Source: Stylophora pistillata
Lineage: Eukaryota
Reading direction: 5' to 3'
Assembly (NCBI RefSeq): GCF_002571385.2
Contig: NW_019217826.1
Location: 81,172-145,171 of the forward strand
Length of the DNA: 64,000 nt
Shown: positions 41,001-52,287 of the stretch, in pieces
Layout: the number at the start of each line of letters is the position of its first letter
Numbering within the stretch: position 1 is the stretch's first letter
Translations under genes and position numbers: made by a program
The notes under the pieces: model-generated
What the model saw: the letters and a program-made list of their open reading frames with translations, nothing else
The model's database searches: none
Told to the model about the DNA's origin: nothing

Positions 41001-42605
41001 TTTCTCATCAATACTTGGTGAGGCCAAAGGTAAAATGATTGGAAGAGAAGCATTAAATGCACCTTTTTCTAGCCCTGGAACACCGGCATTACCATTTGAT
41101 AAAGAGGCTGCTGATGGCAGAGGTTGAAGCACTAAAACAGGTTTCTCTTCATGCACGACAATCTGAGGTTGGTAGTAGAAAGGAAGTTTTGAGGCATGAC
41201 ACTCTTTTCCGCCAAGGATGCTGTCAAGATTTCCATGGGTGGAAAGTACTTGATCTTTTACTAAACTCAGGTTTTCAAGTGATGTCTGTGTGCCTGTTGA
41301 AGACAACGATGACAGTCTCTCTAAAACTGGGGCAGTGACATACGAATGTTCTTTGCAGACATCTTCAGGTACCATTTCATCATCTATGACAGCAACATCG
41401 TCATCCTTAGATCCAGTCATTAGCAAGGAAAGTTGGGTCCCTTCAGCCAATTGTCTTACATTGCCTTTCAACTTTTCTGATTGCTCAGCAAATGACTCAC
41501 TTGGTGTAACAGCCTCTGACAGATCACTTTCACTCGATGTCACCACAGAATGCGAAGATGATGCCATCTCATCTTCATCTGATGATGATGAATCGGCATC
41601 ATCTACTTTGGATTCATCACTCTCCAAAACATCTGTTGCCAGTGACTGGGGCACAGAAGACACATGATACATAGAGGGTGTTCCCTCTTCAACAGAGGCT
41701 TTGTTGGTCTCACTTTCTACAGAAACAACTCTCACAGCCTCTTTCCCATCTACATCTTCAATCTCAGAAAAACAGTCCTCAGCTTTGCCTTGCAATAACT
41801 CGGGTAATTTTTCATCTTCACTTGAATTAGCATATTCTGGGAAGGAACTCACAGAATTTACACCTGTAGTACTTAATGTATTTGCCAAACTTTCATCTTT
41901 GTATGGAAATTCAGACAACTTCTTCTCTCCAATTGGAGTGACATTGCTTATGTCAACAGAACAAACAGAATTGTCACTTGTGGTATCATCGAGTTGATGC
42001 GCTGACTTTTCATCAGTAACAAAGTCATTTTTGCTATCCTCCTTTCCATCCACTGCAGCATTAACATCATCAACAGCAACAGTTGTGACACAATCATCAA
42101 TGTTGCCATCAGCTTCAGATCTAAACTGATCTTTTATCTTGTCCTCTTCATCAGACACTTCAGAAAACCTGTCATCATCCTTTGAAGTGAAGACACTTCC
42201 ACCTTCTATTTCATAGGAATTATTACCACTAGCTGCATTTTCATCTGCTATATGGCTATCTTTACCCTCTCCCAGTCCATTGGATACAACATGGTCTCTC
42301 TCAATGTTATTTTTTTCAACTTGATCAGATAATTCAGGTAAATGTTGCAATTTCTCAAGGCTATTATCATTCTCACAACCATCTGCAGCCTCTACAGATG
42401 GTTTCTCCTCAGAATCTGGTGCTTCATTTGGCTGGGATATCAACCTCATTAGAGAGTCATATTCCTCTTGAGGAGCATTCTTCATAGCCATGGCAAGTTT
42501 CAAAGCACTTTGCAATGCTTCAGGTGAAAAATTTTGGCTCAAACTTTTGATCACATCACTAGTATCAGAATGTTCTGATCTGCCATCATGAGCTCCAATT
42601 TCCAT
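24080..42605 (-). CDS. ZFYVE9: SARA/endofin (ZFYVE9/ZFYVE16)-like FYVE-domain endosomal protein. Coding exons 42605-40086, 39438-39325, 38263-38164, 36937-35660, 35461-35396, 34944-34774, 33570-33473, 32566-32437, 29683-29577, 28368-28273, 26935-26773, 26447-26367, 24926-24472, 24217-24080 (~1838 codons; in-frame TGA at 39339-39337)
   Basis: All 13 introns are GT-AG with compatible phases. Long acidic N-terminus; FYVE finger WVPD..C..C...F....RKHHC*GCGK|IFC..CC...RVC..C; Pro/Gln/Ser-rich linker. C-terminal segments ([55 protein letters not shown]) line up by eye with the SARA/endofin C-terminal domain. ZFYVE9 versus ZFYVE16 cannot be resolved. Confidence 0.85.
25075..25355 (-). mobile_element. 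tRNA-derived SINE with CORE-like central domain
   Basis: Minus strand shows A/B-box-like GTGGCCTCACGTTAG...GGTTCGAGCCC, then TTGGGCAAGACACTTTACTCTCACAGTGCCTCTC resembling the CORE-SINE domain. A decayed relative lies at ~11480-11610. Confidence 0.75.
25657..25701 (-). ncRNA. Minimal type I hammerhead ribozyme motif, inverted copy, sense to the ZFYVE pre-mRNA
   Basis: Exact reverse complement of 25965-26009. Confidence 0.72.
25965..26009 (+). ncRNA. Minimal type I hammerhead ribozyme motif
   Basis: Stem I TGACT/AGTCA, core CTGATGA (25970-25976), stem II GAC/GTC, then GAAA and CGTC. This gives a GUC cleavage triplet and the short palindromic helix III typical of Penelope-associated minimal hammerheads. 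Confidence 0.75.
27232..27477. mobile_element. Short TTAA-flanked MITE family (TTAACCCTTT...AAAGGGTTAA). Relatives at ~8835-9040, ~20935-21065, ~30309-30410, ~36963-37070, ~38443-39210, ~39590-39790, 57780-58275
   Basis: Short TIR CCCTTT/AAAGGG with TTAA outside (piggyBac-like), and a shared body 'catattctccatactgttctctatacatttcct..ggagaatttg..tcaagagcttct'. Confidence 0.7.
27790..28220. mobile_element. Solo copy of the TTAA-flanked ~430-bp MITE seen at 3653-4803
   Basis: TTAA-ACACGAAGGCGCGCTATA ... TATAGCGCGCCTTCGTGT-TTAA, nearly identical to the copies at 3.7-4.8 kb. Confidence 0.85.
28851..29461. repeat. ~610-bp polypurine (GA-rich) low-complexity tandem repeat in a ZFYVE intron
   Basis: Units like GAGGAGAAGGAAGAAGA; almost only A/G on the + strand. 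Confidence 0.95.
30417..30619. repeat. Compound trinucleotide microsatellite (GTT/GTA/GCA/GCG/GTG)
   Basis: Direct reading; it explains the poly-T, poly-V and YH pseudo-ORFs. Confidence 0.95.
30627..31504. mobile_element. Non-autonomous DNA element with ~40-bp TIRs (AGGGAGTTTAAGCAAATCACTACGGCTGGCGCTGCTACGG), possibly PIF/Harbinger-like
   Basis: TIR at 30627-30667 and its reverse complement at ~31464-31504. It contains a nested hammerhead-bearing fragment at ~30936-31020. Confidence 0.7.
30936..30969 (+). ncRNA. Hammerhead-like motif with variant core (CCGACGA) in a Penelope-type fragment
   Basis: GCT-CCGACGA-A-GGGC TAAC GCTC-GAAA-CGTC-AGC; same family as 33664-33907. Confidence 0.5.
31555..32074. 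mobile_element. Two ~175-bp hAT-like MITE copies (~31555-31729, ~31887-32074)
   Basis: Termini CAGGGTTCGACACTAAC ... GTTAGTGTCG(C/A)GCCCTG; the two copies are highly similar. Confidence 0.6.
32080..32255. repeat. 11-bp minisatellite (TTGATATTGTA)n
   Basis: About 16 tandem units. Confidence 0.95.
32750..33125 (-). mobile_element. tRNA-derived SINE, same family as ~55895-56110 on +
   Basis: Head GGTTAACTCAGGTTGAAGGGCGCCGGACTGCCGTGTGGGAGGTCGAGGGTTCAAGCTCC with A/B boxes; shared 'gaggagaa' and 'cttctcggataaggacga' body. Confidence 0.65.
33664..33907. mobile_element. Penelope-type short palindromic element with hammerhead-like cores, in a ZFYVE intron
   Basis: Inverted arms ~33721-33809 and ~33819-33907. 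Core CCGACGAAGGGCTAACGCTCGAAACGTCAGC at 33817-33847. Flanked by 13-bp direct repeat AAAGCTATGTGAA (33651-33663 and 33908-33920). Confidence 0.78.
38549..39092. mobile_element. Kolobok-like non-autonomous element (TTAA TSD, AG...CT termini, long imperfect TIRs), nested in a TTAA-MITE between the two FYVE exons
   Basis: TTAA-AGTGCATATGACACGAAA...TTTCGTGTCAAATGCACT-TTAA, with inverted similarity over roughly 150-200 bp. Confidence 0.7.
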
Positions 42606-49551: not shown

Positions 49552-50447
49552 CAATTGTCAGTGGTGTATTGGTGGAGTGGCACTGGTTTGTGTCTATTGT
49601 TAACCGTTGTTTTGCTGAGATGGCAGCCGTCTTCTAACCCCTTCCCTTACCCACAGGAGACATGAAAGAACAGAGGCTACTGCCTATTCCCTTGTGTTGA
49701 TAGAGCAAAGATACGACTTGGGTTAATAGTAAAAGAATAGAACTTAGAAACAATCTCAGCCAGTGTTGGTAAAGTATCGGCCAAGTACCATCCAAGTGTT
49801 GGTTAAGTATTAGCCAAGTGTTGGCCAAGTATAGTCTAACAGTGTGTTGGTCAAGAAGCAACCAATGTCGTTTGACAAGTCAACTGAGTGTGGGCCTATA
49901 TATGGGCCAATACTCAGTCAATATGTTGACCAACACTCTGTTGACATGTCCACCAGTACTCGGTCAAAACTTGACAAACAGATGCCTTAGTACACAATAT
50001 CCAACACTGATCTCACAATTTATCATAACTACCAAACTATGACTGAATTTTAATGTTGCAGTTTGATTTTGGTCAATCAGCATTACTGAAAAATGAAAGG
50101 AAACATGGGAAACATGGATTGATGATCAGTCTTTCACTATCACAAAGATTTAATGAGATACAATGAAATATATGAAGTTCATATATTTTGAACTGCGGTA
50201 TTAGATACGTATGATGCACGATCCTCGCAGTAGATAGCGCTATTTAAGCAATAGCGAAAATCAGACCTGATTTTTTTTCAGGTCTGATTTTCGCTATTGC
50301 TTAAATAGCGCTATCTACTGCGAGGATCGTGCATCATACGTATCTAATACCGCAGTTCAAAATATATGAACTTCATATATTTCATTGTATCTGATTTATC
50401 ACTTTCACGGGTTTATTACGAATCAACTTAACGGCCTGCTCCCAGTT

Positions 50448-50520
50448 GGCTTGTTAGCTCAATTGGTAGAGCGCTGCACTAGTATCGCAGAGGTCAGTGG
50501 TTCGAATCCCGTACAGGCCT
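50448..50520 (+). tRNA. tRNA-Thr(AGT)-like sequence within the repeat unit, probably a pseudo-tRNA or SINE head
   Basis: Acceptor stem GGCTTGT/ACAGGCC, D arm GCTC/GAGC, anticodon loop CTAGTAT, T loop TTCGAAT, and a T7 terminator just downstream. Mismatches in the T stem and anticodon stem. Confidence 0.55.
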
Positions 50521-50698
50521 GATTTTTTTCAGGTCTGATTTTCGCTATTGCTTAAATAGCGCTATCTACTGCGAGGATCGTGCATCATACGTATCTAATA
50601 CCGCAGTTCAAAATATATGAACTTCATATATTTCATTGTATCTGATTTATCACTTTCACGGGTTTATTACGAATCAACTTAACGGCCTGCTCCCAGTT

Positions 50699-50771
50699 GG
50701 CTTGTTAGCTCAATTGGTAGAGCGCTGCACTAGTATCGCAGAGGTCAGTGGTTCGAATCCCGTACAGGCCT
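50699..50771 (+). tRNA. Second identical tRNA-Thr(AGT)-like sequence
   Basis: Identical to 50448-50520. Confidence 0.55.
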
Positions 50772-52287
50772 GATTTTTTTTCAGGTCTGATTTTCGCTAT
50801 TGCTTAAATAGCACTATCTACTGCAAGGATCGTGCATATGTACAAAGATTTAAGTTGGAGCTGTTTACATTATACATTTCTCAATCTGTCAAAGGTGTGA
50901 TTCATTTTGCAGCTTACTGAAAATTAGAAGTCATGCTCATTCACACTAAGGAAAAATTAATTACCATAAAATATCAAAGGTCATCAGCTTATCAATAACA
51001 TTAGTGGAGATCAATTACTTAGTTCATCATGCTTCTTTCAATATTTACCCTTTCTGCATTTCAGAATACCAAATTTTCAAATAACTCTTGTGCAGAAGAT
51101 TCGTCTCTTCCATGGGAAAGATTTCCATATAACAAAGGTAATCTGTTGTTTTGCCTCTGCTTTCTTTTATCCAAGAATTGTATACATAATGAAGTATGGG
51201 GTTATATGGAAATCTTGCCCTTGCATGTACGGCTTTGATAAAACTAAAGGTTTCGCTCTGAGCAAATTTAAAACTGTGGACATACCAGTGTTCGGGCCTT
51301 AGGCGTATATATTTCCACGTGAGTCACTTCCAATTAAAAAATGCCGGAAGTAAAAAAAAGTCACGTGGGTGACCAATTTTGACGAAAATAATAGCATTGT
51401 TTGATTTGTGTCCATCTCCAAATAACGAGAAATATATCAAGAAAGTACAGGACAAAAAACATGGACAAAATGGGGTCGAAAACAGTGGACAGAAACAGCT
51501 GTAATTCATCACAGTTTTATCCCTTCGCGTAAAACAGCTGAATTTCACGCAATCTTTTAACAGCAGGAAAAACTATACAACAAAAGCTCAAAGGAATCTT
51601 CTAATGATTCATTTTGAAGTAAAGAGTTTCCTGATAAAAGTGCAACTGTACTGACATCAAAAAATGCAATAAACAATCATAGCCATTACGTCAGGCAATC
51701 GTGCATGAGTAAAACTCGAAATAATTTGCTCCACTTACTTCGCGATCAATATGAGATCTATGTGCTAACTGCTTCTAACAACGCGTATTATGACCTTACA
51801 ATCAAATGAAGTAAGGACTTTCCTCTTAAAAATGTCCAATACAGCAATACACGAGAGAAAACAGCCACAGCTAGGCACGAAATAGAAAGGGTTCTGCACT
51901 GGTTTCGGTCCGCTTGGACATAGCTAAATTTCCATGACGTAAATGAACGAACGCTACCTTCAAAAATCTTGTAAAACAATAACAACCCTTCCTCCAAGAG
52001 GGGACAAAGAAACCTTTTTCTAAAATTAAGCAAGTAGATGGAATGGTTATCAAGTTACCTGAGTTTTCTGGTCGGCACAGTTAGATGTCAGTAGCCATGT
52101 AACAGAGTCCGTAATCCGCCATGCTTGCCTAACGAAGTTGATTCGGGGTATGGTGAGTACCAATAGTCTATTCGCCTGTGGAGGAGTCCTGTAGGTAGCT
52201 TTGTTCATGCGTGGAAGTACATGCGTTGTATCCGATTTCACAATTCGACTGATCCGAACATTTCTGCTAGGTTTTCGGAACCAGCAC

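What the first reader, a model, noticed from the sequence alone, without database searches (positions are those of the whole stretch)
50142..50853. tRNA-Thr-like tandem element with Penelope-style insertion geometry: candidate Penelope-mobilised Pol III 'SINE' or rolling RNA template
Seen: a 12-bp TSD (ACAAAGATTTAA) brackets a ~115-bp inverted arm followed by ~2.3 essentially identical 251-bp units. Each unit has a tRNA-Thr(AGT)-like cloverleaf in its MIDDLE with a T7 run right behind it, embedded in a CAGGCCTGA-T7-CAGGTCTG hairpin. A classical SINE has the tRNA at its 5' end, a single unit and a simple-repeat tail, so this differs. Known: tandem terminal repeats plus an inverted truncated 5' copy are the hallmark of Penelope-like element insertions, and retrozymes use hammerheads to cut monomers from tandem transcripts. 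Inference: tRNA-processing nucleases (RNase P/Z) or the internal Pol III promoter could replace the hammerhead, yielding permuted or circular monomers that a Penelope RT copies into concatemers.
Basis: partly seen in the sequence, partly recalled or inferred. Interest (0 to 1): 0.8.

Follow-up and report, generated by a model that had tools for sequence, protein, structure and literature searches.

The report
tRNA-carrying tandem retroelement in a coral
This is one copy of an abundant, recently active coral mobile element made of repeated 251-base units that each carry a tRNA-like gene; it inserts with the odd geometry of Penelope-like retrotransposons, which makes it a ribozyme-free cousin of the 'retrozymes' and a compact natural substrate for studying how Penelope enzymes work.

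Summary
At 50142-50853 a 12-bp duplication, found nowhere else in the window, brackets a 117-nt inverted arm, a T8 joint and 2.3 units of 251 bp. Each unit holds a Thr(AGT) cloverleaf followed by a T7-8 run.

It is a family, not a one-off. The genome, a coral, has at least 40 near-identical loci and an older 81%-identical subfamily. Of 44 outer ends, 42 fall at unit positions about 73 or about 123 (p about 2e-31). 5' ends and inversion joints scatter. In head-to-head insertions both outer ends are these 3' termini. Exact duplications of 8-23 bp flank eight head-to-head loci. This is the published Penelope-like geometry. A young GIY-YIG retroelement family in the same genome also has two termini, head-to-head copies and a 10-bp duplication, but shares no clear sequence with the unit.

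No hammerhead is present. The 'Pol III SINE' reading fails: the terminator sits directly behind the tRNA, and insertion ends do not map to the tRNA ends. RNase P/Z processing and RNA circles remain untested.

Caveats: the assembly is gap-rich, array lengths are uncertain and the RNA evidence is inconclusive. First-stage readers flagged the same family on other pieces of this genome.

Verdict: a new variant of a known kind.

The parts
50142..50153 (.). left copy of the 12-bp target-site duplication
   Evidence: exact repeat of 50842-50853, the only two matches in the window
50154..50270 (-). inverted arm: reverse complement of unit positions about 125 to 9. Its outer (left) end is the canonical 'long' 3' terminus.
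   Evidence: 99% complementary to 50278-50396. The terminus class comes from 44 family ends.
50271..50278 (+). T8 run forming the inversion joint (the loop between the two arms). The joint lies in a near-palindromic octamer pair, which gives microhomology.
50270..50520 (+). first full 251-nt unit (the reference unit used for numbering; position 1 = 50270)
   Evidence: 100% identical to units on at least 40 other contigs
50448..50520 (+). tRNA-like module 1, Thr(AGT), with intact A and B boxes and a degenerate T stem
50521..50771 (+). second full unit (GA, T7, body, tRNA-like module)
50699..50771 (+). tRNA-like module 2
50772..50841 (+). terminal partial unit ending at the canonical 'short' 3' terminus (unit 72-73). 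It carries two CpG-to-CpA changes and a 3-nt deletion.
50842..50853 (.). right copy of the 12-bp target-site duplication

Best explanation
The stretch is one insertion of a high-copy, non-autonomous retroelement of a coral. Its 251/252-nt unit consists of a self-contained tRNA-like Pol III module (A and B boxes plus its own T7-8 terminator) and a 178-nt structured body.

Copies arise by target-primed reverse transcription of a sense-strand RNA that is longer than one unit, either multimeric or circular (inferred). cDNA synthesis starts at one of two fixed sites in the body (unit about 73 or about 123). It runs back through 0.3 to about 10 units and stops at arbitrary points (shown by the ends).

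In roughly a third of events the second end of the staggered break also primes at one of these sites. The two cDNAs then meet head-to-head and are joined, often at palindromes (anatomy shown, mechanism inferred). The staggered break leaves 8-23-bp duplications.

This is the insertion style of Penelope-like elements. The enzyme is therefore most likely supplied in trans by one of the GIY-YIG/RT elements active in the same genome (inferred; partner not identified).

The tRNA module is the conserved core of the family, but it does not define the ends of the template. Its most likely role is to act as an active Pol III/TFIIIC unit or a tRNA-like handle that keeps new copies expressed or recognised, not as a SINE head or a cutting signal (low confidence).
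For: Family and youth: at least 185 matches at 98-100% identity on at least 40 contigs. An older subfamily at about 81% identity gave 2386 first-look candidates.

Fixed 3' ends: 42 of 44 outer ends fall in unit 63-80 or 116-137, binomial p = 2e-31. The 15 5' ends and 10 inversion joints are scattered. In the old subfamily many copies end at the same short terminus.

Head-to-head rule: neighbours of mixed orientation are '- then +', with 3' ends outward, in about 23 of 24 cases.

TSDs: exact repeats of 8-23 bp occur at C43, C37, C88, C123, C224, C227, C147 and C178. A paralogous uninterrupted copy of a MITE-like repeat shows that 13 bp were duplicated at C227. A second, oppositely oriented insertion (C73) sits within 5 nt of the same site.

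Published PLE hallmarks match: 5' truncation, partial tandems, an inverted 5'-truncated copy and a 30-40-bp tail on one end (PMC8557442).

Same-genome enzymes: at least 90 GIY-YIG matches. The region upstream of family A's GIY-YIG is homologous to RVT_1+HTH_animal and HTH_animal+GIY-YIG proteins. Family B is 95-100% identical among its copies, with 1296 candidates. It has two termini 92 nt apart, head-to-head copies and a 10-bp TSD at a non-microsatellite site.

No ribozyme: Rfam, and no CUGANGA core on either strand.

Module conservation: the tRNA part diverged 12% against 22% for the rest between subfamilies, with the boxes intact. DNA depth is 2.5-4 times higher over the module.

The unit RNA folds well, z = -4.96. 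Contigs from RNA libraries cross the tRNA, T-run and next-unit boundary (X17 record 16).
Against: No extended sequence similarity links the unit to the 3' ends of the two GIY-YIG families I could read. There is only a 9-mer near one terminus, which could be chance.

Family A targets (TA)n, and the tRNA element does not.

Four direct-only arrays with no N at either junction (C57, C67, C77, C145) show no clear TSD.

Many arrays abut N runs or single Ns, so array sizes and some 5' junctions are assembly products. Internal units are 0.21% diverged against 1.13% for flank-anchored terminal pieces, which may mean internal units are assembly consensus.

The RNA evidence comes from contigs only, and DNA carry-over or host read-through is not excluded.

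The genome also holds thousands of LINE-type RTs, which were not compared.

An RT was not seen directly in any GIY-YIG locus I fetched: they are truncated or gapped.
Confidence: 0.65

Rival explanations
1. Retrozyme-like life cycle without a ribozyme. Multimeric transcripts are cut to unit length by host tRNA-processing enzymes (RNase P and/or RNase Z acting on the cloverleaf), circularised, and the circles are copied by rolling-circle reverse transcription by a Penelope RT.
For: Unit size, low GC (0.41), tandem arrangement and TSDs larger than 4 bp match metazoan non-LTR retrozymes (PMC7229834). The arrays are perfectly periodic, and 5' ends show no preferred phase, as expected from a circular or endless template. 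The unit RNA is highly structured and its two ends pair. The cloverleaf has a fully paired acceptor stem.
Against: Neither insertion termini (about 73 and 123) nor 5' ends coincide with the tRNA boundaries at unit 178/179 and 251/1. P plus Z would remove the tRNA from the template, yet every integrated unit retains it. From general knowledge, their products (5'-P, 3'-OH) are not RtcB substrates. No read-level RNA data were available.
Confidence: 0.15
2. A tRNA-derived SINE moved by a LINE. Inversions come from twin priming, and tandems come from template jumping or later unequal crossing-over.
For: The element has a tRNA-like module with A and B boxes. TSDs have variable length, as in LINE-type TPRT. 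The genome holds thousands of LINE-type RTs.
Against: The T7-8 terminator lies directly behind the tRNA. There is no A-rich or simple-repeat tail, and the tRNA is not at the 5' end of insertions. From general knowledge, in twin priming the outer end of the inverted part is an internal RNA position, whereas here it is a canonical 3' terminus in about 23 of 24 cases. Two alternative termini and a one-sided extension are PLE traits.
Confidence: 0.12
3. The tandem and inverted geometry is largely an assembly artefact, or a satellite spread at the DNA level by unequal exchange or by eccDNA reintegration.
For: Many arrays touch N runs or single-N joins. Internal units are closer to consensus than terminal ones. 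Summed depth suggests far more unit copies than are assembled. Flank duplications at C73, C87 and C147 look like haplotype or assembly duplicates.
Against: At least eight gap-free insertions have exact TSDs and both canonical termini. The termini are non-random at p = 2e-31. The orientation rule holds in two subfamilies. An independent 2024 run has a contig running from the left flank through the duplication into the arm with no mismatch, although only 26 nt lie in the arm. DNA-level spread would not give fixed ends with variable-length duplications.
Confidence: 0.06
4. An ordinary cluster of functional tRNA-Thr genes.
For: ARAGORN and Rfam call a tRNA with a terminator.
Against: Two T-stem pairs and one anticodon-stem pair are mispaired, and the score is 48.9 bits. 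The units lie inside TSD-flanked, inverted, truncated mobile arrays at dozens of loci.
Confidence: 0.02

Closest known systems
Penelope-like element (PLE) insertions (Penelope/Poseidon, Neptune, Naiad and others)
   Same: Shared features are variable 5' truncation with fixed 3' ends, partial tandems, an adjacent inverted 5'-truncated copy, an extension present at one end only, and trouble in short-read assemblies (PMC8557442). GIY-YIG elements with this geometry are active in the same genome.
   Different: The coral element has no ORF and a 251-nt unit, with up to about 10 units per insertion. It carries a tRNA-like Pol III module. It has no hammerhead. No sequence is shared with the two PLE families compared, and it shows no microsatellite targeting.
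Metazoan non-LTR retrozymes (type I hammerhead tandem repeats of corals, mussels and amphibians; PMC7229834)
   Same: Both are 150-450-bp low-GC units in dimers to multimers, with TSDs longer than 4 bp. Both are non-coding, are presumed to depend on PLEs, and occur in the same animal group.
   Different: The defining hammerhead is absent on both strands, and a tRNA-like gene with a terminator sits in each unit instead. Circular RNA has not been shown.
Sm-alpha / Sj-alpha of schistosomes (SINE-like 335-bp repeats; PMC2770079, PMC8490949)
   Same: These are tRNAscan-positive (tRNA-Gln-like), Pol III-type, SINE-like repeats that occur both dispersed and in tandem.
   Different: Sm-alpha carries an active hammerhead in addition to the tRNA-like part, and the coral unit does not. 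Insertion geometry was not compared here.
Classical tRNA-derived SINEs
   Same: Both have a tRNA-related module with A and B boxes, are non-autonomous, and have TSDs.
   Different: In the coral element the module is not at the 5' end of insertions. A strong terminator lies directly behind it. There is no A-rich or LINE-like tail, and insertions are multimeric and head-to-head.
L1 twin priming (recalled from general knowledge, not tested here)
   Same: Both give an inverted 5' segment within one TSD-flanked insertion.
   Different: In twin priming the second primer anneals internally, so only one outer end is the RNA 3' end. In the coral element both outer ends are canonical 3' termini.

Membership tests
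PLE-type (Penelope-like) insertion, non-autonomous | fixed 3' end with variable 5' truncation | tested here: met
   42 of 44 outer ends fall in two narrow windows, and the 15 5' ends are scattered
PLE-type (Penelope-like) insertion, non-autonomous | partial tandem copies within one insertion | tested here: met
   0.3-9.8 units per insertion. Sizes are uncertain where gaps adjoin.
PLE-type (Penelope-like) insertion, non-autonomous | inverted 5'-truncated copy adjacent at the 5' side | tested here: met
   at least 10 young and at least 13 old loci, with orientation '- then +' in about 23 of 24
PLE-type (Penelope-like) insertion, non-autonomous | 30-40-bp 'tail' extension on one end | tested here: inconclusive
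   There are two termini 50 nt apart, and 6 of 8 complete head-to-head insertions have one of each. This is not significantly more than chance pairing.
PLE-type (Penelope-like) insertion, non-autonomous | sequence or motif shared with an autonomous PLE of the same genome | tested here: not met
   No similarity to the 3' regions of families A and B beyond a 9-mer. At least 3 further GIY-YIG families could not be read.
PLE-type (Penelope-like) insertion, non-autonomous | dependence on a PLE RT/EN | not testable with these tools
   needs a mobilisation assay or co-insertion chimeras
Metazoan non-LTR retrozyme | type I hammerhead ribozyme in each unit | tested here: not met
   No hit with Rfam at E <= 1 over the locus, or at gathering score over the window and 103 kb of family loci. 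No CUGANGA on either strand.
Metazoan non-LTR retrozyme | 150-450-bp low-GC tandem units with TSDs longer than 4 bp | tested here: met
   251 bp, GC 0.41, TSDs of 8-23 bp
Metazoan non-LTR retrozyme | expressed as circular RNA | not testable with these tools
   only contigs of RNA libraries were available
Classical tRNA-derived SINE | tRNA-related head with A and B boxes at the 5' end of the element | tested here: not met
   The boxes are present, but insertion 5' ends are scattered and do not cluster at unit 165-179
Classical tRNA-derived SINE | Pol III can transcribe the whole element (no internal terminator) | tested here: not met
   A T7-8 run lies 2 nt behind the tRNA and T4 lies at unit 19-22
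Classical tRNA-derived SINE | A-rich, simple-repeat or LINE-derived 3' tail | tested here: inconclusive
   There is no A-rich or repeat tail at 44 ends. Comparison with LINE 3' ends was not done.
Functional tRNA-Thr gene | canonical cloverleaf with paired stems | tested here: not met
   2 of 5 T-stem pairs and 1 anticodon-stem pair are mispaired, at 48.9 bits
Satellite DNA | long arrays at few loci, without TSDs or fixed ends | tested here: not met
   There are dozens of dispersed short arrays with fixed ends and TSDs. Longer unassembled arrays cannot be excluded.

The most novel reading that the evidence does not exclude
A ribozyme-free 'retrozyme'. A host-recognised tRNA module, acting through Pol III/TFIIIC or through RNase P (itself a ribozyme working in trans), takes the place of the cis hammerhead. 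Unit-length or circular RNAs are then copied by a Penelope-type RT that starts at two defined internal sites. This would be the first tRNA-based, Penelope-dependent counterpart of a SINE.
Probability: 0.15. Interest if true: 0.85.

Novelty: new variant of a known kind. Interest (0 to 1): 0.6.

Why it matters
Penelope-like elements are the least understood major class of retrotransposons, and their tandem/inverted insertions and 'tails' have no tested mechanism (PMC8557442 calls for an in vitro system). This family shows the whole geometry on a 251-nt non-coding unit, with many recent copies and two precisely mapped start sites. Both ends of a head-to-head insertion are start sites, which argues that both ends of the staggered break prime reverse transcription. 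The family also shows that the hammerhead is not needed for a short tandem element to spread in this style. Finally, it raises the question of what a complete tRNA gene with its own terminator contributes to such an element.

Tried and rejected
(1) Hammerhead or other small ribozymes: none found in the unit, the window or 103 kb of family loci. There is only a sub-threshold HH9 hit beside a family A copy.

(2) Partner by sequence: the unit was compared with 10 GIY-YIG loci and the window. Only a 72%, 53-nt match after the family A stop codon and a shared 9-mer near one family B terminus turned up, and I treat both as chance.

(3) Chimeric insertions joining a GIY-YIG element to the tRNA element: none in the loci held or by coordinates.

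(4) Microhomology between termini and TSD starts: none consistent.

The old subfamily could therefore be studied only by coordinates and 3 chance copies, and no covariation test of the cloverleaf was possible. One compensatory pair in one old copy is only an anecdote.

(6) Metagenome scan for the module: no match.

(7) RT in the GIY-YIG loci: the fetched copies are truncated or run into N. phmmer hits were short fragments. One contig from a related assembly was also truncated. The RT link rests on homologues carrying RVT_1+HTH_animal(+GIY-YIG) and on atlas leads.

(8) RNA evidence: four runs were laid, all as contigs, so no ends, strand or circles can be read.

(9) The Rfam miRNA-model hits on the 119-bp hairpin are far below their gathering scores and were rejected as generic hairpin matches.

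(10) The apparent 'different upstream' variant at C84 proved to be an inversion joint, not a subfamily.

(11) Literature: four searches found no description of a tRNA-bearing, hammerhead-free tandem element with PLE geometry. Sm-alpha is the nearest precedent.
Full report
OBSERVATION. The sequence at 50142-50853 is as described.
- ACAAAGATTTAA occurs at 50142-50153 and 50842-50853 and nowhere else in the 64-kb window, against 0.05 matches expected.
- Between the two copies lie an inverted arm (50154-50270, 99% complementary to 50278-50396), a T8 run at the joint, two identical 251-nt units, and a terminal partial unit.
- ARAGORN and Rfam call a Thr(AGT) tRNA in each unit, at 48.9 bits against a gathering score of 29.
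- The acceptor stem is fully paired, but two T-stem pairs and one anticodon-stem pair are mispaired.
- The A box and B box are intact, and GA plus T7-8 follows the tRNA end.
- No hammerhead or other Rfam ribozyme is present on either strand, and the CUGANGA core is absent.
- The window is ordinary gene-bearing DNA, with CLN3 exons and a rhodopsin-type receptor.
- Sequencing-run labels show that the organism is a coral.

A FAMILY, NOT A ONE-OFF. The unit has at least 185 matches at 98-100% identity on at least 40 contigs of the 398-Mb assembly, in arrays of 0.3 to 9.8 units. An older subfamily, about 81% identical, gave 2386 first-look candidates and has the same architecture. In an independent 2024 DNA run, summed depth over the unit is four to five orders of magnitude above the single-copy flank. 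This is a rough figure, but it suggests far more unit copies than were assembled.

ENDS. I numbered the unit from window 50270 and recorded every outer end that was not next to an N.
- Of 44 ends that face outward in the 3' sense, 19 lie at unit 65-78 (mostly 73-74) and 23 lie at 118-136 (mostly 122-128). That is 42 of 44 within 16% of the unit, binomial p = 2e-31.
- The 15 5' ends and the 10 inversion joints are scattered. Four joints sit at palindromes: the T-run octamers and the hairpin at unit 91-113.
- In the old subfamily many copies stop at the same short terminus.
- The window copy follows the rule. Its arm ends at about 125, and its right end is at 72-73 once a 3-nt deletion and CpG decay are allowed for.

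HEAD-TO-HEAD RULE. Where neighbouring pieces differ in orientation, the order is '- then +', so both outer ends are canonical 3' termini. This holds in about 23 of 24 cases across both subfamilies. From general knowledge, L1-type twin priming gives an inverted part whose outer end is an internal RNA position. The pattern here suggests instead that both ends of the staggered break prime cDNA synthesis at the element's start sites.

DUPLICATIONS AND TARGETS. Exact duplications of 8-23 bp flank eight insertions, mostly head-to-head ones.
- At C227 the target is a MITE-like repeat. Uninterrupted paralogues (L059 and the window) show that exactly 13 bp were duplicated.
- A second, oppositely oriented insertion at C73 lies within 5 nt of the same site in another copy of that repeat.
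- Four direct-only arrays without gaps show no clear duplication. This remains unexplained.

COMPARISON WITH PENELOPE-LIKE ELEMENTS. Published PLE hallmarks are strong 5' truncation, partial tandems, an inverted 5'-truncated copy at the 5' side, a 30-40-bp tail on one end, and assembly trouble (PMC8557442). All of these are seen here, although the 'tail' (two termini 50 nt apart) is only suggestive.

The genome holds at least 90 GIY-YIG matches in several families.
- Family A (L051-L059) ends at (TA)n tracts, and some copies have a short extension. The 241 residues upstream of its GIY-YIG domain are homologous (E down to 1e-114) to proteins annotated RVT_1+HTH_animal or HTH_animal+GIY-YIG. That is the RT-linker-endonuclease layout of PLEs.
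- Family B (L060) is 95-100% identical among its copies and gave 1296 candidates. It has two alternative 3' termini 92 nt apart, head-to-head copies with outward 3' ends, and in L060 a 10-bp duplication at a non-microsatellite site.

Family B is therefore the best candidate helper by behaviour. The genome also has thousands of LINE-type RTs, and their 3' ends were not compared.

WHAT THE tRNA MODULE DOES AND DOES NOT DO. A Pol III transcript from the module would end in the T7-8 run at unit 2-9 and be about 85 nt long. Insertion termini are at about 73 and 123, so such transcripts are not the template, and the element is not a classical SINE.

Insertion ends also do not coincide with the cloverleaf boundaries. 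RNase P/Z cuts therefore do not define what is integrated, and two cuts per unit would remove the tRNA that every integrated unit retains.

Even so, the module is the conserved core of the family.
- Between subfamilies it diverged 12%, against 22% for the rest, with the boxes and the T-run kept.
- DNA depth is 2.5-4 times higher over it.

I therefore read it as a working Pol III/TFIIIC unit or a tRNA-like handle that helps new copies stay expressed or be recognised. This step is inference with low confidence.

RNA. The unit RNA is strongly structured, at -75.4 kcal/mol and z = -4.96. Six RNA libraries from four studies hold the element's words. In the three that I laid, contigs cover the unit and one crosses the tRNA, T-run and next-unit boundary. 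Other contigs run from canonical termini into unrelated sequence. Only contigs were available, so strand, ends, level and circularity cannot be read, and DNA carry-over or host read-through is not excluded.

CAVEATS. The assembly is gap-rich around these arrays. Single Ns sit at several 5' junctions, and flank duplications at C73, C87 and C147 look like haplotype or assembly duplicates. Internal units are 0.21% diverged against 1.13% for terminal pieces, so internal units may be assembly consensus, and both copy numbers and the apparent youth of the family may be overstated. For the window copy, an independent run has a contig from the left flank through the duplication into the arm without mismatch, but only 26 nt of it lie in the arm.

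KNOWN OR NEW. Metazoan non-LTR retrozymes, including coral ones, share unit size, low GC, tandem form and TSD style, but they are defined by a hammerhead (PMC7229834). Sm-alpha of schistosomes combines a tRNA-like part with a hammerhead (PMC2770079 and PMC8490949). Four literature searches found no description of a hammerhead-free, tRNA-gene-bearing tandem element with PLE geometry. First-stage readers of this scan flagged the same family on several other pieces of this genome. Those notes are not independent evidence.

VERDICT. The stretch is a real, abundant, non-autonomous retroelement with Penelope-type integration. It is a new variant of a known kind. The helper and the role of the tRNA module remain open.

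Noticed in passing
window 49757-49967: Short tandem repeats with periods of 11, 22, 23 and 33 bp lie just upstream of the insertion.
   Followed up: no
window 30932-31029 and 33661-33908; L059:2035-2507: A MITE-like foldback repeat is common in the genome. It is a recurrent target of the tRNA element: C227 and C73 hit it within 5 nt of the same site, and C153 is inserted at its edge.
   Followed up: partly
L051-L059 (oriented positions about 1500-2040): GIY-YIG retroelement family A has a C2H2 finger and a Cys-rich linker before the endonuclease. It ends at (TA)n tracts, and two copies carry an extension of about 22 nt.
   Followed up: partly
L060:1100-1800; genome places: GIY-YIG family B is young (95-100% identity) and has two alternative 3' termini 92 nt apart and head-to-head copies. 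L060 is a 5'-truncated copy with a 10-bp duplication.
   Followed up: partly
L056:1062-1127: There is a sub-threshold Hammerhead_HH9 match (25.7 bits, E 0.028) about 100 nt beyond an inverted family A fragment. It may be a retrozyme remnant of the kind other readers reported.
   Followed up: no
family loci: Flank-anchored terminal pieces are 1.13% diverged, a fifth of the changes being CpG decay, against 0.21% for internal units. This is either an assembly-consensus effect or true homogeneity inside arrays.
   Followed up: partly
TSD-bearing loci C43, C37, C123, C147, C224, C227: The dinucleotide GT directly follows the duplication in one orientation in 6 of 8 loci. This may be a nick-site preference, but it was judged by eye on a small sample.
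   Followed up: no
window 50393 (unit position 124): A G-to-C variant accounts for 22-41% of depth in all four runs laid, which suggests a common subfamily difference right at the long terminus.
   Followed up: no
window 50152-50396: The 119-bp near-perfect hairpin formed by the arm and the first unit draws below-threshold miRNA-model hits. If transcribed, such head-to-head insertions would give long dsRNA and could feed small-RNA silencing of the family.
   Followed up: no
C147_424500, C73_265000, C87_506000 (L036, L047, L043): Flank-plus-element duplications (193 bp at C147; identical right flanks at C73 and C87), often with a single N at the joint, are probably haplotype or assembly duplicates.
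   Followed up: partly
window 40077-42605, 53544-54908, 35655-36920 (all on the - strand): Long ORFs of 842, 454 and 421 aa have no Pfam match.
   Followed up: no
G000:C8:1446098-1446913: This is the one exception to the orientation rule. A '-' piece with its short terminus abuts an internal position of a '+' array, which may be a nested second insertion.
   Followed up: no
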